A program made the translations under genes and the position numbers. A DNA stretch of 64,000 nucleotides from positions 17,112,001-17,176,000 of the forward strand of contig NW_027266270.1 in assembly GCF_022045235.1 (NCBI RefSeq), written 5' to 3'. The notes below the pieces were generated by a model. The model saw nothing but the letters and a program-made list of their open reading frames with translations. It was not told where the DNA came from and did not search any database. Position 1 is the first letter of the stretch; every line of letters starts with the position of its first letter. Below are positions 1,578-55,371 of the stretch, piece after piece. Source of the stretch: Haliotis cracherodii. Lineage: Eukaryota.

Positions 1578-2527
1578 CTACTCAGCGCCTTCTGCCTGTT
1601 TCTTTGCCTCTTTCGCGGCCAACTTCTGGTTAATATCGTCCAGGGATACGTCATAGTAATACAACCCGGTTGAAGAATAATCTACCTGAAAAACAAAATA
1701 GTAAAATCAAAAACTTTTGTCACCTATTCAGCGTCACCAAACTAGCTGTATAATTACACACCAAAGTACTTTCTTGTCAATGTTTAGATGACTGTAAGGC
1801 ACTAACATAAAACTGAAATAGACATGGAGGCTTATTGTGCTGCAGTCACATCTAGGCACCGTAATATGTAATACTCCAATCCTGTTCCATATATTTGTCA
1901 GCCATTTAGGTTAAATAATAAGTCACTCACTCTCTGAAGACTCGTTTGCGCCTGTGTTCTTGTGGCAGGAGAACTGCTTAGTGGTGTCAGGCAACAGACA
2001 TTTACTTTTTTATGCACATTGTGTGAGTGGCGGGTGGTACCGGTCGGGCAGGACATGCTTACCCTTTCCGCGAACGCCTGGTGTCATCACTTATTTTCAG
2101 TGATGCATTTATACGGTTTTCTCCGCTATTTTCCCCTTTACACCAGCCCGCCGGAGTCTATCGTGTTGGCTTAACGAGACTGATTACTACTCATGTTCAC
2201 GATCGACAATGTCTTCATACAACATGTGAAACTATAGTTTATAACTGTACACATTAAGTGCAGAAATAAGTTACTCACGTATCCATAGTCCACCACAGCA
2301 CCAACTGCGTACAAGCCGTAGTCATCATAGTTGTATCTGGCGTAGTAATATTCATAATCTCTCTTGTCCTTGTTGTTCTGCTTATCCACGTCGTTTGCAG
2401 AGGCGATGATTGATTTAGCGGCGTTCATGACGTTGTCGCCATTATTCTTGTTTGACCTCTTGGCCCTGGTTAGGGTTCTGGCGGAAGCAACGACAACAAC
2501 GACTGCAAGGATGACGAGGACCTTCAT
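1578..2527 (-). CDS. Gene A copy 1: secreted Tyr/Asp-rich prepropeptide, 118 aa; join(complement 2279..2527, 1578..1685); non-coding exon 1 about 2932..2960
   Basis: Signal peptide MKVLVILAVVVVVASA; RAKR and DKR sites; core DYEYYYARYNYDDYGLYAVGAVVDYGY; donor GTGAGT in phase 0; acceptor TTTTCAG; last exon VDYSSTGLYYYDVSLDDINQKLAAKEAKKQAEGAE then stop; AATAAA on - strand at 1532-1537; exons conserved in three copies. Confidence 0.88.
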
Positions 2528-2931
2528 TCTTGGATCTGTGAATATACATGTTGTAGTCAAAGGTATGGAGGCATGCCAAATAATTTAAATTGGATTCTCA
2601 ATTCTCACAATATCATAAACAATATCACAGTATTATTAACATTTACTGTATATATGTTCAGAAGTTACAAAATCGTCCGGTGCATCAAAACAATGAAAAT
2701 ACATACACAGTGTGGTCAAACAGGTAATGGCAAACTGACCTTTAGGAGTCGTATTGCAAACCTTCTCACCACAATTATTATTCTGACAATCAACGAAAAA
2801 TCATCACAATAGAATTTAAATATTTTTGTTTTCGTCAGAGACAATTATTTCGGGTTTGCTTCAAACTTTACTAAGGCCTTGAATGTAACCCTGAAAAGAA
2901 CTTTTGAGCAAGAGTCGTATAGCATACTTAC

Positions 2932-3235
2932 TTGCAGAGAGCACACGTTGATTTTCCGGTAATTGTACCAAAGTATGGCACCGTTTATATACACTGTGTA
3001 TACCATGTGCCTTCACATATCAGACTTCTGTGTTCACCAAAGATCGGGATAGATAGACACCTCCATCAGTGGGGGGTATCAGTGTCTCGTCTTCTCGGGT
3101 TTCTTCGGTTTCATCAACTACTGTATGGAACGTGGAAGTATTGCAGGATTAAATATCACGGCGCCAAATATAAGCCCTGGCTGAATTGTGATTGTCACTC
3201 ATTCACTGTAGAGGATCGCAAGCAGCTCATATCAG
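2932..3235. promoter_or_regulatory. Bidirectional promoter plus the two non-coding first exons, cassette 1
   Basis: Minus-strand TATATAAA at 2984-2991 with donor GTAAGT at 2926-2931; plus-strand TATAAG at 3169-3174, Inr-like TCATTC at 3199-3204, donor GTATGT at 3236; block conserved in all three cassettes. Confidence 0.72.
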
Positions 3236-3991
3236 GTATGTTCAGTGTACATAGGTTATGAATACCTTTTCTTATTACTTTACACTGATTAATCTAGAAT
3301 CAGTTCTCATATTGATTTTTAGCGTATTTCCAGTACCAATATTTTCGTTTTGAAAAATAACTTGAGAGTGTAACACTCGTGTTGATTATAGCCACAACCT
3401 GCGAATATCCCTGTTCTATATATCCCGGCCTGTAGACAAGAAACACAATCCAGTGATTGATATTTTGAGCAACGATCCACACTATCAACCAAGTCCCCGA
3501 CTCTGACTACCCGGTCCACCAAGTCGCCCCTAACGAGCAGCACGGGTTGATGGAGACCTGGTCTAACCCGGACCAACTCCTGTACTCCCTGGTTATATTC
3601 CCCACGAATACCATCCCTTGTCTCAATCATATTAAGTACCTACTGAAACAGGCAGAAGGAGGAAAATACCATTTAATTACTAAAATAAAATGCACACTCT
3701 GCCAATGGGGTGAGAAAGGATTTGAACTAAACCTAACATGTTTAAATTGAATTTGCTTTTCAATAGGCCAAGCTTGGGAACAAAAACAACATTATCTCGG
3801 TTGTGTACAATACATGTGATAATGTTAAAACCTGGAAAGAATATTTCATAAATTTTTGTACAAATCTCCAGATTTTGTGTTTTTACCTCACCATACTGCT
3901 CTGTAAAGGTGTTTATGAGATTGTAATAATGTTTCCACATCCATACAGTTTTGTATGATCAATACTTGACTTGTATCTCTAAGTGTAAATA

Positions 3992-4255
3992 GACCCGTGA
4001 AGATTCCGGGGTAGAATAGGTCTTCAGCAACCATGCTTGTCGTAAAAAGTGACTATGCTTGTCTTAAAAGGAGACTAACGGGATCGGGTGGTCAGGCTCG
4101 CTGACTTTATGCATGTCATTGATCCCAATTGCGTGATTCGATGCTCATGATATTAATCACTGGTTGTTCTGGTCCTGACTCGATTATTTACATACCGCCG
4201 TCATATAGCTGGAATATTGCTGAGTGCGGCGTTAAACAACAAACCATCCAACCAA
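3992..4255 (+). mobile_element. Non-autonomous retroelement family 2 (GACCCGTGAAG...TCGTAAGAGGCGACTAA...GGCGTTAAACAAC)
   Basis: Repeated at about 3384-3578 (-), 8495-8690, 15283-15551, 23997-24243, 31300-31494, 53058-53155; 3' end resembles SINE family 1. Confidence 0.75.
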
Positions 4256-4936
4256 CTAAGTGTAAATATATTTCAGGTCTTTTCAGTTAAACTCTCACTC
4301 TTACACTGTTGTCTGCACCATCAGCACTATGCAATGAAGTGCATATGACGATCTCACTAAGAGCAAATCTGATTTTTTTGTCAACGGTGGGTTAGCCTTG
4401 TGGTTAAAGCGTTCGCTCGTCACGCCGAAGACCCGTGTTCAAATCCTCACATGGGTACAATGTGTAAAGCCCATTCCTGGTGTATCTCGTCGTGACATAA
4501 CTGGAATTTCACTTCTCCACTACTACACCTGACATGTTAAAACTAAATTTGCTTTTTAATAGCCCATAATTAGCAACAAAAAGAAAATTATCTTGGTTTT
4601 ATACAGTAATAATGATAAATGATAATGTTAAAAGCTGGAATGAATATTTTAAAAATTGTTCTACAAATATCCAGAATTTGTGATTTTACCTGATCCTACT
4701 GATCTGAAAAGATGTTCATGAGATTGTAACAATGTTTTCATGTGCAAACATTTGACTTGTACCTCTGACGTCGCTGCTGAGTGTAAACATAGTTCAGGTC
4801 TTTTCATCCCTCTTAGTCGACTGGGCCACCAGAGTACCACCACCCCCACAAAAAAACGACCCCTCTTTGCAAGAATCTTTCCATACGAAATATAGAGCAG
4901 TAATGAATGATGATGTTCACCATATTTCCTCACAGA

Positions 4937-6090
4937 ATGAACGTCACCTGTGTCTTCCTGTTGGCGCTACTCGTCGCCTTCACCTTGGCTACACCTCGTG
5001 AGTCGAGAATGAACGCCAGAAAACAGGACCGACAGTCACAGCAGTCCAAGGCCGCGCCCGAGAAGTCACAGCAGTCCAAGGCAGCGCCTCAGAAGAGGGA
5101 CGATTTAACCTTCCTCGATTCTGACACGACTTACGGTTCCTCCTCTGTAACTGGATATGAAGATCATGGTTATGTGAGTAGCTGCGAATGAGTGAGTGAG
5201 TGAGTGAGTGAGTATGGTTTTACGCCGCTTTTAGCAATATTCCAGCAATATCACGGCGGGGGACACCAGAAATGGGCTTCAAACATTGTACCCATGTCGG
5301 GAATCGAACCCGGGTCTTCGCGTGACGAGCGAACGCTTTAACCACTAGGCTATCCGACCGCCCCTAACTGCGAATGAAGTGAGTGACTTAAAGTGTAGAA
5401 GTTGACATCACATCAGCGGTTTTCAGATAAGTCATGTTTGGTCGTGAAGAACATTTCGTTTACCAACATTTTTACGATTCTGCTGCCGTTACTGGTTACA
5501 AAGATAGTGGCTACGTAAGATTCTCCGCGTTTAGTAATTAATCACCTCATAAGAACTTATCGATTTAGGTGGACGTTTTCTGAAAATCACTCATTGTTTT
5601 CTTTCGAAAGGGTCAGAAAAAGCGGAGAGGGGGTAGTTTACACTTTTCAATTTGGCATGTTTAAATGGGGTGGGTAAAGGGTTGAGCTGTTCACTCATCA
5701 CACTCAACTTCGTATTGTACAATTTCATATACCAACTAATTGTTCCACAGTTTAACGAGTGGGACTAAAGCATGATGTATGTATGTAAGAAAAAATCGCT
5801 CTCCACTGGTCCCCCACGAGACAGTTGGACAACTTATATTATTAACTGCTCGGTTCACATGTAGTTCCTTGTGATAACATGTACCTGCCTTCACGCCATA
5901 CAACAAATGTACAATGACGAGTGACATCAGACACCCACCATTTGTTCCACAGTATAACCAGTATGACTACGGGTATGGATGGCTCGAGTACTACAACAAA
6001 GATGAGGAGCAACAGGAAGCCAAGCAGGAGACGCAGCAGAGACGCCGTCGTCGTAGAAGGGCAGTTCCCGTTGTCAGACGAGTACAGTAG
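4937..6090 (+). CDS. Gene B copy 1: secreted Tyr/acidic prepropeptide with poly-Arg tail, 124 aa; join(4937..5173, 5953..6090)
   Basis: Acceptor CACAG just before ATG; signal peptide MNVTCVFLLALLVAFTLA; KR then DDLTFLDSDTTYGSSSVTGYEDHGY; phase-0 GTGAGT donor; acceptor TTCCACAG; last exon YNQYDYGYGWLEYYNKDEEQQEAKQETQQRRRRRRRAVPVVRRVQ then stop; AATAAA at 6125. Confidence 0.88.
5192..5364 (-). mobile_element. tRNA-derived SINE family 1, full-length with target-site duplication CTGCGAATGA
   Basis: A/B-box tRNA head GGGGCGGTCGG..TAGTGGTTAAAGCG..GGTTCGATTCC and (ACTC)n tail; other copies about 4385-4510, 7350-7590, 16515-16620, 27770-27900, 31091-31217, 55666-55793, 58160-58270, 58810-58918, 61407-61496. 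Confidence 0.85.
5473..5520 (+). pseudogene. Relic duplicate of the 3' end of gene B coding exon 1 (YDSAAVTGYKDSGY plus GTAAGA donor) inside B1 intron
   Basis: About 34/42 nt identical to the B2/B3 exon end; no in-phase acceptor found. Confidence 0.6.
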
Positions 6091-6205
6091 ACATGGAGCT
6101 GTAACACAACTGTAACGTTATTGAATAAACCTTGGAATCTATTTGCTTGTCTATCATTGCTCGAATATTGCTTTAAACTCACTCACTCGTTGTATTTATA
6201 TAGAA

Positions 6206-6488
6206 GTGAGTGAGTGAGTGAGTTGAGTTTAACGCCGCTTTTAACAGTATTCCAGTTATGTACGGCGTGTCAGCTTAATGTGGGAGGAAAGCCCCAAGTG
6301 TATGCAGGTCTCAGACATTTACCACTTCGGTGAAACCCACGAGCACGGGTATGGTGCTGACAAACCTAGAAACATAATCGGGGCGAACCGGAATTCGAAC
6401 CCACAATCATAGGTGTCTGGCGTGCCCAAGGGACGCAACTCTGCACAGCGAATCGCGGCGCCTTTGACGACTGGGCCACCCGTGCCCC
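6206..6488 (-). mobile_element. tRNA-derived SINE family 3
   Basis: Head GGGGCACGGGTGGCCCAGTCGTC..GGTTCGAAT; copies about 19885-20120, 25091-25370, 30675-30952, 57047-57320. Confidence 0.8.
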
Positions 6489-12868: not shown

Positions 12869-13172
12869 CTGCCCAGTTGATATCTCGACATTCACACAGA
12901 CTATTTTGATAAATTGCTAAACTATAAAAGCATTTATATTACTATGAGCCTCCAAATATCGGACTTCTTTGTTTACTGTAGATTCCGACTGATAGAAATA
13001 TCCTTTGACCGTGCAGGTCAATGAAAGGGTATCCGTGTCGCGTTTTCTCAGCAACTACTGTATGGAACATGGAAGTACTGCAGGATTAAATATCAAGACA
13101 CAGAATATAAGCCCTGCGTGAATTGTGAATGTCATTTCTGTACTGAAGAGGATCCCAAGCAGCTCGAATCAG
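12869..13172. promoter_or_regulatory. Bidirectional promoter plus non-coding first exons, cassette 2
   Basis: Minus TATAAA at 12933-12938 with donor GTAAGT at 12863-12868; plus TATAAG at 13106-13111 with donor GTACGT at 13173. Confidence 0.72.
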
Positions 13173-16360: not shown

Positions 16361-17002
16361 ACATGGAGCTGTAACACAACTGTAATGTTCTGCAATAAAC
16401 CTTGGAATTATTTTAGTCAACGACAAACTGATTATTTGTTCTTCCTATAATCCAGTATGCATGATGTAACCGGGATTGTGTTGGTATCAAAGAAGACCAG
16501 ACACTGGCTACGGAGCCGCTTTTAGCAATATTCCAGCAATATCACGGCGGGGTACCCTAGAAATGGGCTTCACACATTGTACCCATGTCGGGAATCGAAC
16601 CCGGGTCTTCACCGTGACGGACAAGGCAAATACTTCATACTAACGCACATGTTGTGATGAACGTTACAGCACATTACATGATGTAGTTGAGACCTAGAAT
16701 GAATGAATGAATGAATGAATGAATGAATGAATGAATGAATGAATGAATGAATGAATTTCCTCCAGAAGTTCCATCAGAAGATTGACAAAATCTCTGATAT
16801 TCACAAAGCATATATATATATATTCGTCATTAACTAAATTTTTTGTACACAAGTGAACACTATTACGATACAACAGATTAATCTAATACATTTCTGAAAT
16901 TTGAGACATATTCTCAGAATATTAATGATATGTCTTCCCATGTACACTGGTTCATAATTCCAAATTGTAAGTGGGCATTTAATACATTACTATTGAACTA
17001 CT

Positions 17003-17495
17003 ACTGTGCCAACTATTTCATATTTTACATGACATATACATGCCAATACAAATACTTACTTGTCTTTACCAAGCCAGTGTGCCCACTATTTCATATTTTA
17101 CATGAAATATACATGCCAATACAAATACTTACTTGTCTTTACCAATCCAGTGTGCCCACTGTTTCATATTTTACATGACATATACATGCCAATACAAATA
17201 CTTACTTGTCTTAACCAAGCCAGTGTGCCCACTGTTTCATATTTTACATGACATATACATGCCAATACAAATACTTACTTGTCTTAACCAAGCCAGTGTG
17301 CCCACTATTTCATATTTTACATGAAATATACATGCCAATACAAATACTTACTTGTCTTTACCATGCCAGTGTGCCCACTATTTCATATTTTACATTACAT
17401 ATACATGCCAATACAAATACTTACTTGTCTTTACCAAGCCCGTGTGCTTACTATTTCATATTTCCAAGAAATATACATGCCAATACAAACACATA
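17003..17495. repeat. 73-bp minisatellite, about 6.5 copies
   Basis: Period seen in sequence and in staggered ORFs 17060 and 17133. Confidence 0.9.
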
Positions 17496-17849
17496 TCTTC
17501 ACGTATAACCAGTGTACATCTATTATGACATATACAAAATGATACTAAAATTTAAATAAATGAGTCTTTAAGCGAAAAAGATCGATAGAAAATTGAATTT
17601 ATGAACGTATTAGAAAATCAGAATGAAGCCTGCCTTACAAATTAGAATTTAGAATTTATTTTCTTAGTTGTTTTGTTTTGATTTTTTTAAAACATGCCTT
17701 CACCTCAGCTTAAACTGAACGGTAATTGTGACTGTCAATATATCCTAAATCTCAGACTAACTGAATCTCACATAATTACCCACCCCAAAACAACCCCCCA
17801 ATACATAACATAAACAGAAGGACGAGCATTTTACCAATAATTTTGTGGT

Positions 17850-20704: not shown

Positions 20705-22560
20705 CTACTCAGCGCCTTCTGCCTGTTTCTTTGCTTCTTTCGCGGCCAACTTCTGGTTAATATCGTCCTGGGAAACGTCATAGTAATACAACCCGGTTGA
20801 AGAATAATCCACCTGAAAAACAAAATGCCAAATAATAACTCTGTAGTGAACGTGATATGTCATTTAATCATCACCCTTTCTCCCCCTCGCTGCAGTTAAT
20901 AGTGTTTGAAGCGGTGTAAATAAAAGCGACAGAACCCTTTCCATATCCAGATGAAATCTCTGCCAAAAACATAGATCACTGTCCGATTCCGACTATATCA
21001 TGAGCATTTGTTTATGACTCGCTATCAAATAGTGATGATACCAGGTGTTCGCCCATCAGTGGCACCTGTCACAAACACATGCAAAGGCAAGTCAATTGAA
21101 TTCACTCACAATGGCTCCATATGCACATGTAACTGAAATATGCATTATAATATGAGGAAACCTAGAGTTATTATAGAATAGAATAGAATTTTTTGCACAA
21201 GACGCCCTCGTTGGGGCATAGAACAAGCATAATACATTTGGTACATTTGAACAACACACACGTACACATTCATGAACACACACACACTACTACTACTGTA
21301 ACGGGCTTGTAAGACGAAAACATATTGGAATAATTTATAGTCAAAACTAGTCACTCAGATGTACTAGTCACTCTGATGTACTAGTCACTCTGATGTACTA
21401 GTCACTATGATGTTCTAATCACTCTGATGTACTAGTCACTCTGATGTACTAGTCACTCTGATGTACTAGTCCCTCTGATGTACTAGTCACTCTGATGTAC
21501 TAGTCACTATGATGTACCAGTCACTCTGATGTACTAGTCACTCTGATGTACTAGTCACTCTGATGTACTAGTCACTCTGATATTCTAATCACTCTGATGT
21601 ACTAGTCACTCTGATGTACTAGTCACTCTGATGTACTAGTCATTCTATATGTACATGCAACCCGTTAATTCACGTGGAACGTATTTTAGTACGATCCAGT
21701 TGAATGACAAAAACAAAAATGTTAAATACTATTGCGAAATACGTGATATACCTGATCCTATTGGGAACCCATGGGGTAATATTAGACGACAATACTAACC
21801 ACATATATATAGTGCTTATACGTGAATTTACAATAGAGCTGAGTATAAATATTAGGACTTGGTTTTCGATACCTTATCAGCGTGATAAGGCAACTCCTGC
21901 ATCCTCTTTAAGACAAGTTTAAGGAACATCCAATTTTATCTGGGTTTTTAAAAAAAATACAAATGTGTTTTGCTACTTTTTTCAGATAATGTGTATAAAA
22001 CCTGAATATGTCTCTAAAAATATACATAAAACATTTACCAACTGTGACTGATGCGGTATGTTAGCAAAGATACTTTGTCTCGCTATTTAAATTCTTAGCG
22101 AGAACATAAATACATTCCTAATCCCTACGTTTACGCTAGTTATACAACACTTGAAAAATTGCCCGCCTTATAAACTTACGTTCATGAATGCATGAATGCA
22201 CTTGGTGGATATGAATTCCTTTCGTACACAACATTCAATTTGTGAAATTATTTGAAAATGCTACAACAGTGCCTGCTGTTTAACAATCCGGTTTTGATAT
22301 AAGTTACTCACGTATCCATAGTCCACCACAGCGCCAACTGCGTACAATCCGTAGTCATCGTAGTTGTATCTGGCGTAGTAATATTCATAATCTCTCTTGT
22401 CCTTGTTGTTCTGCTTATCCACGTCGTTTGCAGAGGCGATGATTGATTTAGCGGCGTTCATGACGTTGTCGTCACGATTCCTGTTTGACCTCTTAGCCCT
22501 GGTTAGGGTTCTGGCGGAAGCAACGACAACAACGACTGCAAGGATGACGAGGACCTTCAT
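20705..22560 (-). CDS. Gene A copy 3, 118 aa; join(complement 22312..22560, 20705..20812)
   Basis: Intact frame with the same exon lengths; core identical at protein level with synonymous changes only. Confidence 0.88.
21345..21650. repeat. 17-bp minisatellite (GTACTAGTCACTCTGAT)n in gene A3 intron
   Basis: Direct inspection. Confidence 0.92.
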
Positions 22561-23234: not shown

Positions 23235-23558
23235 TTGCACAGTTGAAACCTCGATATTCACACAGAATACAATGTATGTTACATTGCTAAACTTTAATAG
23301 CATTTATATTAACATGAACCTCCAATTATCGGACTTCTGTGTTCACTGAAGATTCCGACTGATAGAAATATCCAGTCACCGTGCCTATCAAATTGAGGGT
23401 ATCCATGTCTCGTCTTCTCAGGTTTCTTCAGTTTCAGCACCTAGTAGATAGAACATGGAAGTATTGCAGGATTAAATATCAAGGCACAGAATATAAGCCC
23501 TGGGTGAATTGTGAATGTCATTCCTGTACTGTAGAGGATCCCAAGCAGCTCGAATCAG
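23235..23558. promoter_or_regulatory. Bidirectional promoter plus non-coding first exons, cassette 3
   Basis: Minus TATAAA at 23303-23308 with donor GTGAGT ending 23234; plus TATAAG at 23492-23497 with donor GTACGT at 23559. Confidence 0.72.
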
Positions 23559-24450
23559 GTACGTTCTGTGTAAATTAGGAGAAAAAACTATTCTGTTTTA
23601 AAATATACGGAGGTTCATCGTTGATGTTACACTTCGCGGAGTCAACAATGAACCTCAAAGTTAAAAACAGAATAGGTTTATCTCCGTTATACCACGCCTT
23701 TTTAGACGGACTTTATTTTTTGGGTCAGTGCAGTGATGCAGTCAGAAGTGGTTATCGCTCATTGTATTTTTTTTTATTTCGATAAACATAGTGAGTAGGG
23801 TATCCAAGTGGGTAAAGTGTTCGCTTGTCCGAGTTCAATTCTCCACATGGGTACAACGTTGGTCACTCCCGGTTGCAACTCCCGCTTCCTCCGATTACAG
23901 TTTTTACACAACGAGTGCGTCGCCAGATCTCGGTAAGCTCATACTAATTTAGGGTTTACCAACATGTTTACAAATGTAACTTGCAATATGTGGGAGACAC
24001 GTGAAGATTCCGGGGTAGAATAGGTCTTCAGCAACCCATGCTTGTCGTAAGAGGCGACTAACGGGATCGGGTGGTCAGGCTCGCTGACTTGTTTGATGCA
24101 TGTCATCGATCCCAATTGCGTGGATCGATGCTTATGTTGTCAATCACTGGATTGTCTGGTCCAGACTCGATTATATACAGACCGCCGTCATATAGCTGGA
24201 ATATTGCTGAGTGCGGCGTTAAACAACAAACAAACAAACAAACTGCAATAGGTGGGTTTTCCGTAATACACTGATAAAATAAACGCATCATGACATCACT
24301 GAATTTTGCAGTAATCGTGTGATCAGTAAGCCAAAGTCACCTATCAGAACGCAGTAGAAAATGTCTCGAAAACAATGAAAACAGACTGTTTTCTTATAAT
24401 GTAATAGATTTTTAACCCAACTATTTATCCATATAATGTCCGTTGTCATA

Positions 24451-24845
24451 GGGGCGGTCGGGAGGCCTAGTGGTTAAAATGTTCGCTCGTCACGCTGAAT
24501 ACTCGGGTTCGATTCCTGACATGGGTACAATGTGTAAAGCCCATTTCTGGTGTTCCCCGACGTGATATTGCTGGAATATTGCTAAAAGCGGCGTAAAACC
24601 ATACTCACTCACTCCGTTGTCATGATATTAATCGCCGGTTTCACAGGTCATGACTCGATTGGTTACAGGCCGCGGTCATATAGCTGGAGTGAGAGTATGG
24701 TTTTACGTCGCTTTTAGCAATATTCCAGCAATATCACTGCGGGGGACACACATGGGTTTCACACACTGTACACATGTGGGGATTCGAACCCGGGTCTTCT
24801 GCCTGACGAGCGAACGCTTTTACCACTAGGCTACCCCACCGCCCC
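24451..24845. mobile_element. Two SINE family 1 copies in inverted, tail-to-tail orientation (24451-24614 +, 24688-24845 -)
   Basis: Both match the family consensus. Confidence 0.8.
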
Positions 24846-25567
24846 TCATATAGCTGGAGTATTGCCGAGTGCATTTTAAAGTACATTAAAGACTTCTGAT
24901 GCGTTACGTATTTATCAACTTAATTCAATCGTGTGTTATTAAAACTTCAACTTTCTTCACAGCATTGTCACTATCAGAGGCGTAAAACACTACTCACTCA
25001 CTGAAAGATTTGTCTACATTTTGAAACGTAGCATCCTAGTGGGAATTACCACACCAACCCAACCCGGAAAATAAGTGTTGTCAGGCTCGGTGAGTGTGAG
25101 TGAGTTGGGTTTAACGCCGCTTTTAACAGTATTACAGTTATATCAAGGTGTGTCAGCTTAATGTGGGAGGAAAGCCCGAAGTGATGCAGGTCTCAGACGT
25201 TTACCATTTCGGTAAAACCCACGAGCACGGGTATGGTGCTGACAAACCTAGAAACATAATTGGAGAGAACCGGGATTCGAACGCCCAATCATAGGTTTCT
25301 GGCGTGCCCAAGGGACGCAACTCTGCTCAGCGAATCGCGGCGCCTTAGACGACTGGGCCATCCGTGCCCCCAGTCAGGCTCGGTGACTTGGTAGATACTG
25401 ACATCATGGCTGGGAGTGTCCTTCGTAGTGTTACTCTCTGATGTGCCTTGCCCAGACTTGATTATGTACAGAAAATGGCTTTCAATATATAAGAATTATT
25501 ATCACGAAAGTCGCCAGATGTCAGATGGTTCGATGGTGGATGACATTGTTAGATATTTCTCCACAGA

Positions 25568-40500: not shown

Positions 40501-42690
40501 ACCACCACTGCCATCACCACAACCACACACACACCCCTCCCCCACTGCCATCACAAAAACCTCCACCACTGACATCACAACCACCACCACCACACCCCAT
40601 CCCACCACCACTGACATCACAACCACCACCACCACACCCCATCCCACTACCACTACCACACTCCGTCCCACCAGCAGTGCCACCACAACCACACACACAC
40701 CCCTCCCCCACTGCCATCACAAAAACCACCACCACCACCGCACCCCATCCCACTACCACCACCACACTCCATCCCACCACAACTGCCATCACCACCACCA
40801 CCACCACACCCCATCCCACCACCACTGCCATCACAACCACCACCACACCCCATCCCACCACCACCACCACACCCCATCCCACCACCACTGACATCACAAC
40901 CACCACCACCACCACACCCCATCCCACTACCACTACCACACCCCATCCCACCACCACTGCCATCACAACCACCACCACCACACCCCATCCCACCACAACT
41001 GCCATCACAACCACCACCACCACACCCCATCCCACTACCACTACCACACCCCATCCCACCACCACTGCCATCACAACCACCACCACCACACTCCATCCCA
41101 CTACCACCACCACACCCCATCCCACCACCACTGCCATCCCACCACCACCACCACACCCCATCCCACTACCACCACCACACCCCATCCCACCACAACTGCC
41201 ATCACAACCACCACCACCACACCCCATCCCACTACCACCACCACACCCCATCCCACTACCACCACCACACCCCATCCCACTACCACCACCACACTCCATC
41301 CCACCACCACTGCCATCACCACCACCACCACCACACCCCATCCCACCACAACTGCCATCACAACCACCACCACCACACCCCATCCCACTACCACCACCAC
41401 ACCCCATCCCACTACCACCACCACACTCCATCCCACCACAACTGCCATCACCACCACCACCACCACACCCCATCCCACCACAACTGCCATCACCACCACC
41501 ACCACCACACCCCATCCCACCACAACTGCCATCACAACCACCACCACCACACCCCATCCCACCACCACTGACATCACAACCACCACCACCACCACCACAC
41601 CCCATCCCACTACCACCACCACACCCCATCCCACCACAACTGCCATCACCACCACCACCACCACCACACTCCATCACGACTAGCGCTGCCATCACAACCA
41701 CCACCACACACAATCACGACTAGCGCTGCCATTAAAATCACCACCACCACCACCACTACTACCACACACCATCCCGACCACCACCACCACCACCACACAC
41801 CATCACGAGTAGCGCTGCCATTACAATCACCACCACCACCACCACCACTACCATCACAACCACCACCACTGCCATCACCACAACCACCACCACCGAACTC
41901 CATCACGACTAGCGCTGCCATCACAATCACCACCACCACCACCACACACCATCACGACTAGCGCTGCCATCACAATCACCACCACCACCACCACACACCA
42001 TCACGACTAGCGCTGCCATCACAATCACCACCACCACCACCACACACCATCACGACTAGCGCTGCCATCACAATCACCACCACCACCACCACTACCACAC
42101 CCCATCCCACCACCAGTACCACACTCCATCCCGACCAACACTGCCATCCCCCCCCCACCACCACCACCACCGCCACACCCCATCCCACTACCACACCCCA
42201 TCCCACCACCACACCCCATCCCACCACCACCCCCCCCCACCACCACCACCACCACCGCCGCCGCCACACACCATCCCATCACCACTACCACACCCCATTC
42301 CACCACCACTACCACACCCCATCCCACCACCACTACCATCACAACCACCACCACTGCCATCACAACTACCACCACCACACCCCATCCCACCACCACTACC
42401 ATCACAACCACCACCACTGCCATCACAACTACCACCACCACACCCCATCCCACCACCACTACCACACCCCATCCCACCACCACTACCACACCCCATCCCA
42501 CCACCACTACCACACCCCATTCCACCACCACTACCATCACAACCACCATCACTGCCATCACATCTACAACCACTACCACACCCCATCCCACCACCACTAC
42601 CACACCCCATCCCACCACCACTACCATCACCACTACACCCACACACACACCTCTTCCCACATCTCCAGCCTGACCCCACTGCACACACCC
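37520..42690. repeat. About 5.2-kb CAC/ACC-rich low-complexity satellite built from units such as ACACCCCATCCCACCACC and ACTGCCATCACAACC
   Basis: Directly visible; long ORFs in several frames on both strands are by-products. Confidence 0.93.
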
Positions 42691-53300: not shown

Positions 53301-55371
53301 TTTAACTTCAGTTCACCGCCTAACCCGTTCTGTGACCATCAAAGTGATAATATTCCTGTGGGTGTATTCCCTTTTATGGACCGTCCCTCCGCTTCTGGGC
53401 TGGAGCGCCTATACCTACGAACCCTTCGGGACCTCCTGCAGCATAGACTGGGACGACGAGGACTCTGGAGCTGTCGCTTACACATGGTGCCTTATTGTCT
53501 ACTGCTACCTCCTCCACATCATCATCATAGCCTACTGCTACTACAAGATCGCCATGAAGGCCAAGGAGGTCCACTCAAGGCTCAAGCATTTTACCATTGG
53601 GGGAATATGCAACTCCGATTCCATGTGCCTGCGACGTGTTCAAATGGAGCGGAAATCAAGCCTTGTAAGTTCATTCATTCATTCATTCATTCATTCATAA
53701 AAAAAACTGCCTTTTTATAACACTCTGCTAGTTGCGCATGTACAGTAACTGTACACGTCACTTCTGTGTTCACGAATGGCCTAGTCGTCTTAGGCGCCGC
53801 ATTAAACTATGCAGGAATCAGAAACCCATGATCGAATCCCGGGCCCCGATTGTATTTCTTGGTTTGTCAGCACCACTCACTCACTCGCTCGCTCNNNNNN
53901 NNNNNNNNNNNNNNNNNNNNNNNNNNNNNNNNNNNNNNNNNNNNNNNNNNNNNNNNNNNNNNNNNNNNNNNNNNNNNNNNNNNNNNNNNNNNNNNNNNNN
54001 NNNNNNNNNNNNNNNNNNNNNNNNNNNNNNNNNNNNNNNNNNNNNNNNNNNNNNNNNNNNNNNNNNNNNNNNNNNNNNNNNNNNNNNNNNNNNNNNNNAC
54101 ACAATACAAGGGTTGATATAAAAACAAGTTCAATGAAACGGTCAGTTTGTTAAATGTATGGGTGTGTAAAAAATTACAAGTAAAGTCTTTGTTCGTCAAA
54201 TAATATTGAAAATTCAATAATTTCCCCAAAATATGTAATCAACGCAGGCATGTTTAAAACAATATGAACCAAATTGATTTCAATTCATTACCTGTTTTAC
54301 ATCTTAAACCATGATTTTGACTACTATGCGATTCCCTCCCGTACATACTGAATTTGATAAACAATATCTTTCCCCAGTAAATGAGCACAGTTGCCTGTTC
54401 AGGCCGAAACTAATAAAATCCGTATTAAATAATAAAAATGCTTGTACTGTCAATTCAATTATTCATGTGAAAGTCATGTTCCAAAAACGAATTATTACAA
54501 ACAATTGACAAAATTAGAAATGCATGGATTTTCTTTAAAATTCCCCAAATAAACCACGGAGGCAGAATAACCTGCTTGGAATTTTTAGTTTAATTAAGCA
54601 TACGTGCGTCTACGACTGTCATAACTTTACGATATGTTTGTTTCTATTGTTAAACGTCGCCCCCGCAATATTCGGTTACATCTTGATCGGTCGAATGTCA
54701 AGACTGAATTTGATCTGATCGGTCAAAACCCGCTTGAGCGTATTCCACCCTGATCGGTCGAATGTCAAGACTGAGTTTGATCTGATCGGTCAAAACCCGC
54801 TTGAGTGTATTCCATCCTGATTGGTCGAATGTCAAGACTGAATTTGATCTGATCGGTCAAAACCCGCTTGAGCGTATTCCACCCTGATCGGTCGAATGTC
54901 AAGACTGAATTTGATCTGATCGGTCAAAACCCGGTTGAGTGTATTCCACCCTGATCGGTCGAATCGGTGTGGCTGACCAGGCTTGACGGCCTCCAGGGCC
55001 CACTTGCACAAAGCGATCTTAGCGCTACAACTATTGTAAGCCTACAATGTATGTTAAAGTATGGGAGTTACGATCATCATATTCTTCATATCTCAGTGCT
55101 CCCTAAGTGAAAAAAATCAATTTAAATAAATTAAATATGAATAGGTGGCCGAAGTCGTATTATGTGATGGTTTATATTTGTTATATTTGTTTGTATGTTT
55201 TTGAAGGAGAATACCCCAATTTCTTGTTTTCATATAATTCTACGTGAGTAGAGGCAGATGGTTTGATGCCCCGCGCTATTGTATTTCCTGGTTTTATTAA
55301 GATGCGTCTTACGTTTCAACATTAGGTTGAAGCGGTCGTTAAACTCCAAACTACTACAACTACTACTACTA

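What the first reader, a model, noticed from the sequence alone, without database searches (positions are those of the whole stretch)
2932..3235. Compact conserved bidirectional promoter coupling A and B
Seen: in each cassette two outward-facing TATA boxes lie about 170-185 bp apart (2991/3169, 12938/13106, 23308/23492). Each is followed by a short non-coding exon ending in a GT donor, and matching acceptors sit just upstream of each ATG. The intervening block (CAGACTTCTGTGTTCAC, GATAGA, TGTCTCGTCTTCTC, GGAAGTATTGCAGGATTAAATATC) is conserved and TE-free while flanking introns are not. Inference: shared cis-elements enforce co-transcription. Established: most described bidirectional promoters are TATA-less; TATA-TATA divergent pairs are known from histone H2A/H2B and silkmoth chorion A/B pairs, which encode co-assembling products.
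Basis: partly seen in the sequence, partly recalled or inferred. Interest (0 to 1): 0.78.

Follow-up and report, generated by a model that had tools for sequence, protein, structure and literature searches.

The report
Shared two-way promoter, abalone gene pair
A 300-base stretch between two back-to-back genes for small secreted tyrosine-rich abalone proteins looks like a compact two-way promoter with a TATA box on each side, a tidy but not unprecedented arrangement.

Summary
Window 2932-3235 lies between two head-to-head genes, A on the minus strand and B on the plus strand. They encode small secreted Tyr/Asp-rich proteins found only in Haliotis. A fourth, inverted cassette lies just upstream of the window.

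Cassette 1 and cassettes 2/3 belong to types that predate the split of two abalone species. Between them the flanking introns are no more alike than shuffled sequence. The block is 74-88% identical, and most conserved next to B.

The B splice (3235 to 4936) is supported indirectly. Annotated proteins of two species carry a 15-residue N-terminal extension encoded by cassette 3's first exon. The A splice (2932 to 2535) rests on conserved splice sites and one contig that leaves the genome at the acceptor.

A and B family transcripts are both deep in 2 of 4 RNA-like runs and both near zero in the other 2.

Start sites were not measured, and coupling through shared elements is not shown.

Verdict: a real TATA-TATA divergent promoter. 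It resembles the silkmoth chorion A/B pairs and is a new member of a known kind. Interest is moderate to low.

The parts
1578..1685 (-). Gene A exon 3 coding part (35 codons plus stop). An AATAAA lies about 40 nt downstream.
   Evidence: Sequence. The junction ...VVDYGY|VDYSS... is present in annotated proteins P0001, P0008 and P0009. Loose ends at 1682 and 2276 in runs X1 and X6 show this splice in contigs.
2279..2535 (-). Gene A exon 2: 8 nt of 5'UTR, ATG at 2527, signal peptide, propeptide ending KDKR, and the start of the Tyr-rich part. It ends GGATAC|GTGAGT.
   Evidence: It is 95-96% identical to the other 3 copies. Only Haliotis proteins match.
2536..2931 (-). Gene A intron 1, a 5'UTR intron.
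   Evidence: The acceptor CACAG|ATCCAA is conserved in c1-c3. There is no similarity to c2/c3 beyond about 34 nt. The X5 contig (record 9) stops fitting at 2538 with 11 letters left over. The X7 contig (record 25) reads on to 2626, so it is unspliced there.
2932..2961 (-). Gene A exon 1, untranslated. The 3' end at the donor CAA|GTAAGT is read from the sequence. The 5' end is inferred as about 30 nt downstream of the TATA.
   Evidence: The donor is conserved at the same alignment column in 4 of 4 copies. The start site was not measured.
2984..2991 (-). A-side TATA box, TATATAAA.
   Evidence: It matches TATAWAAR 8 of 8. c2/c3 have TATAAATG with 1 mismatch, displaced about 11 nt in the alignment.
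2996..3165 (.). Core block between the two TATA boxes, with conserved islands around 3020-3036, 3052-3057, 3086-3099 and 3134-3158.
   Evidence: It is 74-76% identical between c0/c1 and c2/c3, with 13-16-nt indels in the middle. c0-c1 are 94% identical and c2-c3 84%. z = 36-62 against shuffles. No Rfam match lies in the block.
3134..3158 (.). Best-conserved element, GGAAGTAtTGCAGGATTAAATATCA. From memory, untested, it contains a GGAA (ETS-like) core and GGATTA (TAATCC, a K50-homeodomain-like site).
   Evidence: 24 of 25 columns are invariant in 4 copies. The 17-mer occurs exactly 5 times in the genome: the 4 cassettes plus one site with unrelated surroundings.
3169..3174 (+). B-side TATA box, TATAAG.
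   Evidence: It lies within the invariant run AATATAAGCCCTG. It matches only 5 of 8 positions of TATAWAAR (read).
3195..3204 (+). Initiator-like sites: TCACTC (A at 3197, +28 from the TATA T, 1 mismatch to TCAKTY) and TCATTC (A at 3201, +32, exact).
   Evidence: Read. c2 has TCATTT and c3 TCATTC, with the A at +28. The consensus comes from Table 7 of PMC2670823.
3200..3235 (+). Gene B exon 1, untranslated in c1. The 5' end is inferred at about 3197-3201. The 3' end is at ATCAG|GTATGT.
   Evidence: It is 78-83% identical to c2/c3 and 100% to c0. The homologous exon of c3 encodes the first 14 residues of annotated protein P0004.
3236..4935 (+). Gene B intron 1, a 5'UTR intron full of repeats.
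   Evidence: There is no similarity to c2/c3 after about 20 nt except shared repeat families. Repeat-derived depth is very high at 3368-3531 and 3860-4515 in all 4 runs.
4936..5173 (+). Gene B exon 2: ATG at 4937, signal peptide, propeptide ending PQKR, and the start of the Tyr-rich part. It ends GGTTAT|GTGAGT.
   Evidence: It is 100% identical to residues 1-79 of annotated protein P0003.
5953..6090 (+). Gene B exon 3 coding part (45 codons plus stop). An AATAAA lies at about 6125.
   Evidence: It matches the C-terminus of P0003. There are 4 copies in the genome.
12869..13172 (.). Cassette 2 copy of the block, from A exon 1 donor to B exon 1 donor.
23235..23558 (.). Cassette 3 copy of the block. 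Its B exon 1 holds an in-frame ATG at 23515.

Best explanation
Window 2932-3235 is the common 5' region of a divergent gene pair. The pair exists as four copies on one abalone chromosome.

The region holds two outward-facing TATA-type core promoters about 178 bp apart, with predicted start sites about 240 bp apart. Each drives a short untranslated first exon, about 30 nt for A and about 36 nt for B. Each first exon is spliced over a 5'UTR intron (0.4 kb for A, 1.7 kb for B) onto an acceptor 8 nt (A) or 1 nt (B) before the ATG.

The DNA between the TATA boxes carries the tissue-specific activator sites. The strongest candidate is the GGAAGTA-TGCAGGATTAAATATCA element, 10-35 nt upstream of the B TATA. 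Because both core promoters sit within 200 bp of these sites, one set of bound factors most likely switches both genes on in the same cells.

Shown:
- the anatomy and its conservation in 4 of 4 copies;
- constraint on the block relative to the introns;
- the B-type exon 1 to exon 2 splice in the annotation of two species;
- family-level co-occurrence of A and B transcripts.

Inferred:
- the exact start sites;
- use of A exon 1;
- that the elements are shared rather than private to B.
For: Anatomy. It was read, and the four copies are aligned.

Copy number. The genome holds 4 block matches, 4 A exon 2 matches and 4 B exon 3 matches, always together.

Constraint. For c1 versus c2/c3 the introns score z about 0, the core block z 36-62, and B TATA plus exon 1 z about 40. 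The two B types (MNVTC... and MNVTF...) both occur in H. rufescens proteins, so this divergence predates that species split.

B splice. P0004 and P0013 carry an N-terminal extension that equals the translated c3 exon 1.

B core promoter geometry. The distance from TATA to donor is 67 nt in 3 of 3 window cassettes. An initiator-like TCAKTY lies at +28/+32.

A side. The TATA matches the consensus 8 of 8. Donor and acceptor are conserved. An X5 contig leaves the genome at 2538 with 11 letters over.

Expression. In X1 and X6 contig depth is in the thousands on the A exons and in the hundreds to thousands on the B exons. In X5 and X7 A is at 0-26 and B at 0-10. In the two expressing runs no contig of depth 1 or more covers 2548-3367, so no deep transcript crosses the block from further upstream.

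Not something else. The block has no Rfam match, and indels of 13-16 nt break its one long open frame in other copies.
Against: - No start site was measured. All runs were contigs, and first exons of about 30-36 nt are too short to be laid or were not among the listed loose ends.
- The contigs carry other letters relative to cassette 1 and come from coded organisms. Expression is therefore shown for the A and B families, not for cassette 1 itself.
- One low-depth X7 contig (record 25, depth 4.3) is spliced at intron 2 but runs 91 nt into 'intron 1'. Intron retention or a start nearer exon 2 therefore exists.
- Conservation is concentrated on the B side. The A core promoter region is 44-66% identical between cassette types.
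- In the young pair c0-c1, A intron 1 (97%) is more alike than the core block (93.5%).
- The coding exons show mosaic low synonymous divergence (pS 0-0.13). Gene conversion therefore operates here and could have helped keep the block alike.
- The B TATA fits the 8-mer consensus only 5 of 8, and A has no initiator match (best has 2 mismatches).
- Four runs, selected partly through these very genes, make a weak test of co-expression.
Confidence: 0.65

Rival explanations
1. There are two independent promoters that merely abut. The conserved DNA is B's own proximal promoter and 5'UTR. A is driven by its own, faster-evolving core promoter and by elements elsewhere. Co-expression, if real, comes from the shared chromatin neighbourhood rather than from shared sites.
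For: The identity gradient runs 82-88% for 3111-3235, 65-69% for 2996-3060, and 44-46% at the A TATA zone. The distance from A TATA to donor varies (60, 70, 75 nt), while B's is fixed at 67.
Against: The conserved elements lie only about 150-230 nt from the predicted A start, well within reach of a proximal activator. All 4 copies keep the pairing and no solitary A or B exists in the genome. A and B families are on together and off together in 4 of 4 runs.
Confidence: 0.22
2. The block serves B only. A's real start lies inside the supposed A intron 1, close to exon 2, and the A 'exon 1' with its donor is not used.
For: X7 contig record 25 is spliced at intron 2 but is collinear with the genome to 2626. 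AT-rich TATA-like strings exist 45-60 nt upstream of 2535. No join from 2932 to 2535 was listed.
Against: In the two deeply expressing runs the depth in 2548-2711 is 0 (X1) and 2 (X6), against 4400-4700 in 2384-2547. The X5 contig leaves the genome at the acceptor. The CACAG acceptor and the GTRAGT donor are conserved in cassettes whose introns are otherwise unalignable.
Confidence: 0.08
3. The block's similarity among cassettes is a by-product of duplication and gene conversion, not of selection on regulatory sites.
For: There is a mosaic pattern in the coding exons. c0's A exon 2 is nearest c3 (pS 0.037) and its B exon 3 nearest c2 (pS 0), although c0's introns match c1. The young pair c0-c1 shows no excess conservation of the block.
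Against: The block is more diverged (12-35%) than synonymous sites of the converted exons (0-13%), so it was not recently converted. Even so it stays alignable where both flanking introns are at shuffle level. Its edges coincide with the two splice donors. The homologous c3 first exon, and its counterpart in H. rufescens, is demonstrably part of an annotated transcript.
Confidence: 0.05

Closest known systems
Silkmoth (Bombyx mori) chorion A/B gene pairs with a common promoter between two TATA boxes
   Same: Two families of small secreted structural-type proteins are paired head to head and divergently transcribed from a short common region bounded by two TATA boxes. The pairs are repeated in a tandem array. 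The inter-TATA region is conserved among pairs (>90%, >80% or <50% by class in the chorion locus; 74-94% here). GATA-type sites (WGATAR) are present in both systems. The chorion facts come from passages of PMC4639761. Gene conversion among chorion copies is my recollection; here it is suggested.
   Different: There is no sequence relationship: Pfam finds nothing above cut-off for A or B. This is a mollusc, not an insect. Both genes here have a wholly or mostly untranslated first exon and a 5'UTR intron. There are only 4 pairs. Co-assembly of A and B is untested. Conservation here is strongly skewed to one side.
Maize defensin-like Def1/Def2 embryo-specific asymmetric bidirectional promoter (PMC5301941)
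   Same: A short intergenic region between two small secreted-protein genes drives tissue-specific, unequal expression in both directions. I saw only the search listing, that is the title and the highlight.
   Different: It is a plant system and was functionally dissected with reporters. Nothing here has been tested at the bench.
Typical animal bidirectional promoters (divergently paired genes with start sites under 1 kb apart)
   Same: Head-to-head orientation, predicted start sites about 240 bp apart, and co-expression expected. The definition and co-expression come from passages of PMC2670823.
   Different: In fly and human those are mostly housekeeping genes and lack TATA boxes, with CpG islands in human (PMC2670823 passages). 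This block is AT-rich (window GC about 0.39-0.40 here), has a TATA box on both sides, and serves lineage-restricted genes that are on in some samples and off in others.
Histone H2A/H2B divergent pairs
   Same: Divergent genes for partner proteins share a short intergenic promoter. This is recalled, and the pair is listed among examples in PMC2670823.
   Different: PMC2670823 lists H2A/H2B among TATA-less examples. The products here are unrelated to histones, and these genes have 5'UTR introns.

Membership tests
Bidirectional (divergent) promoter / divergently paired genes | Two adjacent genes on opposite strands, head to head | tested here: met
   A is on the minus strand and B on the plus strand in c1-c3, and mirrored in c0. 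Annotated proteins exist for both.
Bidirectional (divergent) promoter / divergently paired genes | Transcription start sites less than 1,000 bp apart (definition in PMC2670823) | tested here: inconclusive
   The first-exon donors are 304 bp apart and the TATA boxes 168-184 bp apart, so the predicted start sites are about 240 bp apart. No start site was measured, because the contigs cannot show them.
Bidirectional (divergent) promoter / divergently paired genes | Correlated expression of the two genes | tested here: inconclusive
   Both families are deep in 2 of 4 runs and both near zero in 2 of 4. The sample is small, the runs were chosen partly through these genes, contig depth is a poor measure, and the result holds at family level, not cassette level.
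Bidirectional (divergent) promoter / divergently paired genes | Cis-elements in the intergenic region needed for both directions | not testable with these tools
   This needs reporter deletions. Only conservation is available.
Chorion-type TATA-TATA paired gene families | An outward TATA box on each side of the common region | tested here: met
   A side: TATATAAA or TATAAATG. B side: TATAAG. This holds in 4 of 4 copies (sequence).
Chorion-type TATA-TATA paired gene families | Pairs repeated in an array, with the inter-TATA region conserved among pairs | tested here: met
   There are 4 pairs within about 45 kb. The core block is 74-94% identical.
Chorion-type TATA-TATA paired gene families | Products homologous to chorion A/B proteins | tested here: not met
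   No Pfam family is above cut-off for any of the 4 exon translations. Only Haliotis relatives were found. This locus is an analogue, not a member.
Chorion-type TATA-TATA paired gene families | The two products assemble into one structure | not testable with these tools
   Both have a signal peptide, a dibasic-ended propeptide and a Tyr/Asp-rich body. Tyr is 23% of 62 residues in A and 13% of 70 in B, and Asp+Glu is 19% in each. The destination and partners are unknown.
A and B as paralogues (inverted duplication origin of the pair) | Significant sequence similarity and shared exon structure | tested here: inconclusive
   BLASTP gives E 0.002 at 24% identity, with the intron after GY at the aligned place. 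Profile-profile comparison gives no support (probability 1.5%, 10 columns). The same three-exon layout and phase-0 intron were read.

The most novel reading that the evidence does not exclude
A and B are the two subunits of one secreted, tyrosine cross-linked abalone material, for example a tanned matrix. The TATA-TATA block would then be a molluscan counterpart of the chorion system. A single activator platform sets the ratio and timing of both partners. The pairs evolve in concert by gene conversion, and the pair arose by inverted duplication of one gene around its own promoter.
Probability: 0.2. Interest if true: 0.55.

Novelty: new member of a known kind. Interest (0 to 1): 0.33.

Why it matters
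If start-site mapping confirms it, this would be a clean invertebrate example of a tissue-regulated bidirectional promoter with a TATA box on both sides. It comes with four natural variants that differ by small indels and substitutions. That makes it a ready-made series for asking which elements act in both directions and how the output ratio of two partner genes is set.

It would also flag a Haliotis-restricted pair of very highly expressed secreted Tyr-rich proteins of unknown role.

The principle is already known from chorion genes and plant defensin-like pairs, so the gain is an additional case in a phylum with few dissected promoters. My literature searches found no description of this pair or of such a promoter in abalone or oyster. 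Those searches cover only the held library.

Tried and rejected
Tried without result:

The cross-species test of the block is therefore missing. The only cross-species evidence is at protein level.
- Read laying did not list a join or loose end at 2535/2932 or 3235/4936. The first exons are short and 1,917 loose ends and 472 joints were not shown. This is no evidence either way.
- The listed join 5505 to 5953, with 9 letters between, is a c2/c3-type B transcript. It fits a relic exon copy better than c1's own exon 2. It is not a new splice of cassette 1.
- Rfam found two chance-level rows in A intron 1 (E 0.42 and 0.82, far below gathering) and nothing in the block.
- The 109-codon open frame across the block is rejected as coding, because 13- and 16-nt indels break it in other copies.
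- Inverted symmetry of the block, expected if it arose by inverted duplication, appears only as short arms. The best is a 10-nt perfect pair in c2 that is absent from c1.
- The conserved 17-mer is not a genome-wide element. There are 5 exact sites, 4 of them the cassettes. With up to 1 mismatch there are 14 sites, against 5 for the reversed control. The extra exact site has no similar context.
- Function of A and B: Pfam gave only sub-threshold rows, including Conotoxin at 22.6 bits against a cut-off of 25.1 over the signal/pro region of B. The Atlas gave scores of 0.81-0.83, within chance. The representative search found only P0001 itself and a 51-aa fragment. Paper searches gave nothing on this family.
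- The search of earlier findings by words gave nothing.
- The global c2-c3 alignment mis-set A exon 3 (48.5%, against 97-98% by BLAST). I disregard that row.
- In one search my cassette 0 row was the wrong piece of L006. I ignore it and count c1-c3 only.

Limits on sources:

- I did not ask for supplementary files. Supplementary Figs 8-9 of PMC4639761, which hold the chorion promoter alignments, and the RefSeq transcript records with their UTRs, could bear on the comparison and on the 5' ends.
- Spliced models were searched exon by exon, and the joined step was left out. Full-length searches used the database record P0001.
Full report
WHAT IS THERE

The window is abalone DNA. The exon translations of both genes match only Haliotis proteins. 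B exon 2 is letter for letter the first 79 residues of a protein annotated in Haliotis cracherodii.

Positions 2932-3235 lie between two head-to-head genes.

Gene A is on the minus strand:
- an untranslated exon 1 ending at 2932 (CAA|GTAAGT);
- exon 2 at 2535-2279, with the ATG at 2527;
- exon 3 from 1685 to the stop at 1578.

Gene B is on the plus strand:
- exon 1 ending at 3235 (ATCAG|GTATGT);
- exon 2 at 4936-5173, with the ATG at 4937;
- exon 3 at 5953-6090.

Both products (118 and 124 aa in the annotated records) have a hydrophobic N-terminus, a propeptide ending in a dibasic site, and a Tyr/Asp-rich body. After the dibasic site A has 14 Tyr in 62 residues and B has 9 in 70.

No Pfam family reaches its cut-off. 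A search of 1.84 billion representatives with the annotated A protein found only that protein and a 51-aa fragment. I searched the spliced models exon by exon and left out the joined step.

COPIES

The genome holds four.

The 304-bp block has 4 matches in 1.18 Gb. The fourth, c0, is 95% identical, inverted, and lies about 7 kb before cassette 1, outside the window. A exon 2 and B exon 3 also have exactly 4 matches each, always flanking a block. There is no solitary A or B.

- c0 and c1 are a young pair: their introns align at 80-97%.
- c2 and c3 are a second pair: A intron 1 is 79% identical, and most of B intron 1 is unalignable.
- c0/c1 versus c2/c3 is old. The two B signal-peptide types (MNVTC... 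and MNVTF...) both occur among H. rufescens proteins.

CHECK OF THE OBSERVATION

The outward TATA boxes are 178, 168 and 184 bp apart. The donors and acceptors are present and conserved in every cassette examined.

The block is conserved where the flanks are not. For c1 against c2 or c3, the 300 nt of intron next to either first exon score like shuffled sequence (z -0.6 to 0.4). The core block scores z 36-62, and the B TATA plus exon 1 scores z about 40.

The block is not a repeat. The introns carry elements with enormous contig depth in every run and many copies in the window.

Three qualifications apply:
- A TATA octamer by itself means little: 21 matches against 16.7 expected, and 20 of 100 shuffles reach that number.
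- The young pair c0-c1 shows no excess conservation: core 93.5% against A intron 1 at 97%.
- Conservation is lopsided. Between cassette types, 3111-3165 is 82-87% identical, the B TATA-initiator zone 82-88%, and B exon 1 78-83%. The left third of the core is 65-69%, and the A TATA zone as aligned is 44-46%. The A TATA is displaced by about 11 nt.

CORE PROMOTER ANATOMY

B side:
- TATAAG lies inside an invariant 13-mer.
- The distance from the TATA T to the exon 1 end is 67 nt in c1, c2 and c3.
- Initiator-like TCAKTY sites lie with their A at +28 (c2, c3; 1 mismatch in c1) and at +32 (exact in c0/c1).
- These were read. The consensus comes from PMC2670823 Table 7.

A side:
- TATATAAA is a perfect TATAWAAR in c0/c1, with one mismatch in c2/c3.
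- No initiator match is better than 2 mismatches.
- The distance from TATA to donor is 60, 70 and 75 nt.

Predicted start sites are therefore about 2960 (-) and about 3197-3201 (+), some 240 bp apart. These are predictions, not measurements.

EVIDENCE FOR THE SPLICES

B. The annotated protein P0004 (129 aa) begins MSFLYCRGSQAARI, then R, then MNVTF... The first 14 residues are the translation of c3 23515-23556. The R codon spans the last two letters of exon 1 and the first letter of exon 2. The rest is c3 exon 2. The gene model behind it therefore joins 23558 to 25567, the exact counterpart of 3235 to 4936.

A H. rufescens protein, P0013 (129 aa), begins MSFLFYRGSQAARIR. The same join is thus annotated in a second species. 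These are gene models, not reads. However, a 44-nt first exon 2 kb upstream is unlikely to be chosen without transcript support; that judgement is my inference.

In c1 the first exon has no ATG. In c2 the same frame stops after 5 codons. The extension is therefore probably an upstream ATG and not a real N-terminus.

A. No listed join covers this splice. The indirect evidence is:
- The donor is one of the few conserved islands left of the block.
- The acceptor is conserved in c1-c3.
- An X5 contig that is spliced at intron 2 stops fitting at 2538 and has 11 more letters.
- In the two deep runs the depth falls from 4,400-4,700 in 2384-2547 to 0-2 in 2548-2711.

Against it, one X7 contig of depth 4.3 runs on to 2626.

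EXPRESSION

All four runs were contigs from coded organisms, laid at 90% likeness. They report on the gene families, not on cassette 1.

| Run | A exon bins | B exon bins |
|---|---|---|
| X1 | 2,126-4,674 | 514-994 |
| X6 | 4,428-6,269 | 407-2,737 |
| X5 | 2.7-5.2 | 0-10 |
| X7 | 0-26 | 0 |

(All values.)

So 2 of 4 runs have both families on and 2 of 4 have both off. This fits co-regulation but is a small sample, and the runs were partly chosen through these genes.

In X1 and X6 nothing of depth 1 or more lies on 2548-3367. Neither gene is therefore fed by a deep transcript crossing the block.

EVOLUTION

Synonymous divergence of the coding exons is low and mosaic. For A exon 2, pS is 0.037 for c0-c3 but 0.073 for c0-c1. 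For B exon 3, pS is 0 for c0-c2 but 0.13 for c0-c3. This conflicts with the intron relationships, which suggests gene conversion among the cassettes.

The block is more diverged than those synonymous sites, yet it remains alignable where the introns are not. I read that as constraint, possibly helped by older conversion.

BLASTP gives E 0.002 with the intron at the aligned spot. Profile comparison gives nothing.

MECHANISM AND RIVALS

Most likely (0.65) this is one compact divergent promoter. It has two TATA-type cores, and activator sites between them are close enough to serve both genes. The best-kept element is GGAAGTA-TGCAGGATTAAATATCA, just upstream of the B TATA. Its resemblance to ETS and K50-homeodomain sites, and that of GATAGA to GATA sites, is recalled and untested.

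The rivals are:
- two abutting promoters with no sharing (0.22);
- A starting next to exon 2, so that the block serves B only (0.08);
- similarity by conversion alone (0.05).

COMPARISON WITH KNOWN SYSTEMS

The closest system is the silkmoth chorion locus. [quoted passage not shown] Typical fly and human divergent pairs are housekeeping genes and lack TATA boxes (passages of PMC2670823). The maize Def1/Def2 promoter is a further analogue, seen in a search listing only.

The abalone proteins are unrelated to chorion proteins. This is an analogue by architecture, not a member of that family.

Searches of the held library for Haliotis or oyster with 'bidirectional promoter', and for one gene identifier, found nothing on this pair.

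VERDICT

The B splice is independently annotated. The A splice and both start sites remain to be measured. The coupling claim is plausible but unproven, and conservation weighs towards B. This is a new member of a known kind, of moderate to low interest.

Noticed in passing
G000:C7:17107799-17108103 (about 3.9-4.2 kb before the window start); loci L002, L005, L006: A fourth A-block-B cassette (c0) lies just outside the window in inverted orientation, tail to tail with cassette 1's gene A. Its block is 95% identical to c1 and its introns are 80-97% identical.
   Followed up: yes
window 2279-2527, 5953-6090 and their copies: The coding exons of the four cassettes have low, mosaic synonymous divergence that contradicts the intron relationships. 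For example, c0's A exon 2 is nearest c3 and c0's B exon 3 nearest c2. This suggests gene conversion among cassettes.
   Followed up: partly
window 5440-5514: A relic copy of the 3' end of B exon 2 (...VTGYKDSGY followed by GTAAGA) lies inside B intron 2 of cassette 1. Contigs of c2/c3-type B transcripts fit it better than the real exon end, which produces a spurious 5505-to-5953 join in the read tables.
   Followed up: partly
window 5192-5365: A SINE-like element begins with (GAGT)n and is flanked by a 10-nt direct duplication. It is inserted about 10 nt after the B exon 2 donor. The same family occurs at least 8 times in the window and has enormous contig depth in all runs.
   Followed up: no
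window 23515-23558: Cassette 3's B exon 1 holds an ATG in frame with the main ORF. The annotated protein therefore gets 15 extra N-terminal residues ahead of the signal peptide. Cassette 2 has a stop after 5 codons and cassette 1 has no ATG. It is probably an upstream ATG and not a real extension. A H. rufescens copy has it too.
   Followed up: partly
window 12887-12896 and 13124-13133: A perfect 10-nt inverted repeat links A exon 1 and the B TATA-initiator zone in cassette 2. It is 9 of 10 in cassette 3 and absent in cassette 1. It may be a trace of an inverted-duplication origin, or chance.
   Followed up: no
window about 37500-42200: About 4.7 kb of strongly C-rich sequence on the plus strand (GC 0.60, GC skew -0.9) is made of more than 100 degenerate units spaced by multiples of 3 (18, 21, 24, 27, 42 nt). 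It looks like a long repetitive coding exon on the minus strand.
   Followed up: no
window 21278-21697; 16932-17515; 54676-55010: Tandem arrays with 17-nt, 73-nt and 67-nt units lie in intergenic or intronic DNA.
   Followed up: no
window 53895-54098: A run of 204 N. It was left untouched.
   Followed up: no
window 4937-5083 (B exon 2, residues 1-49): A sub-threshold Pfam row for Conotoxin (22.6 bits against a cut-off of 25.1) covers the signal and propeptide region. It most likely reflects the generic signal-pro layout of secreted mollusc peptides.
   Followed up: no
window 2276-2626: One low-depth contig (run X7, depth 4.3) is spliced at A intron 2 but collinear with the genome through 91 nt of A intron 1. 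It reflects intron retention or a minor start nearer exon 2.
   Followed up: no
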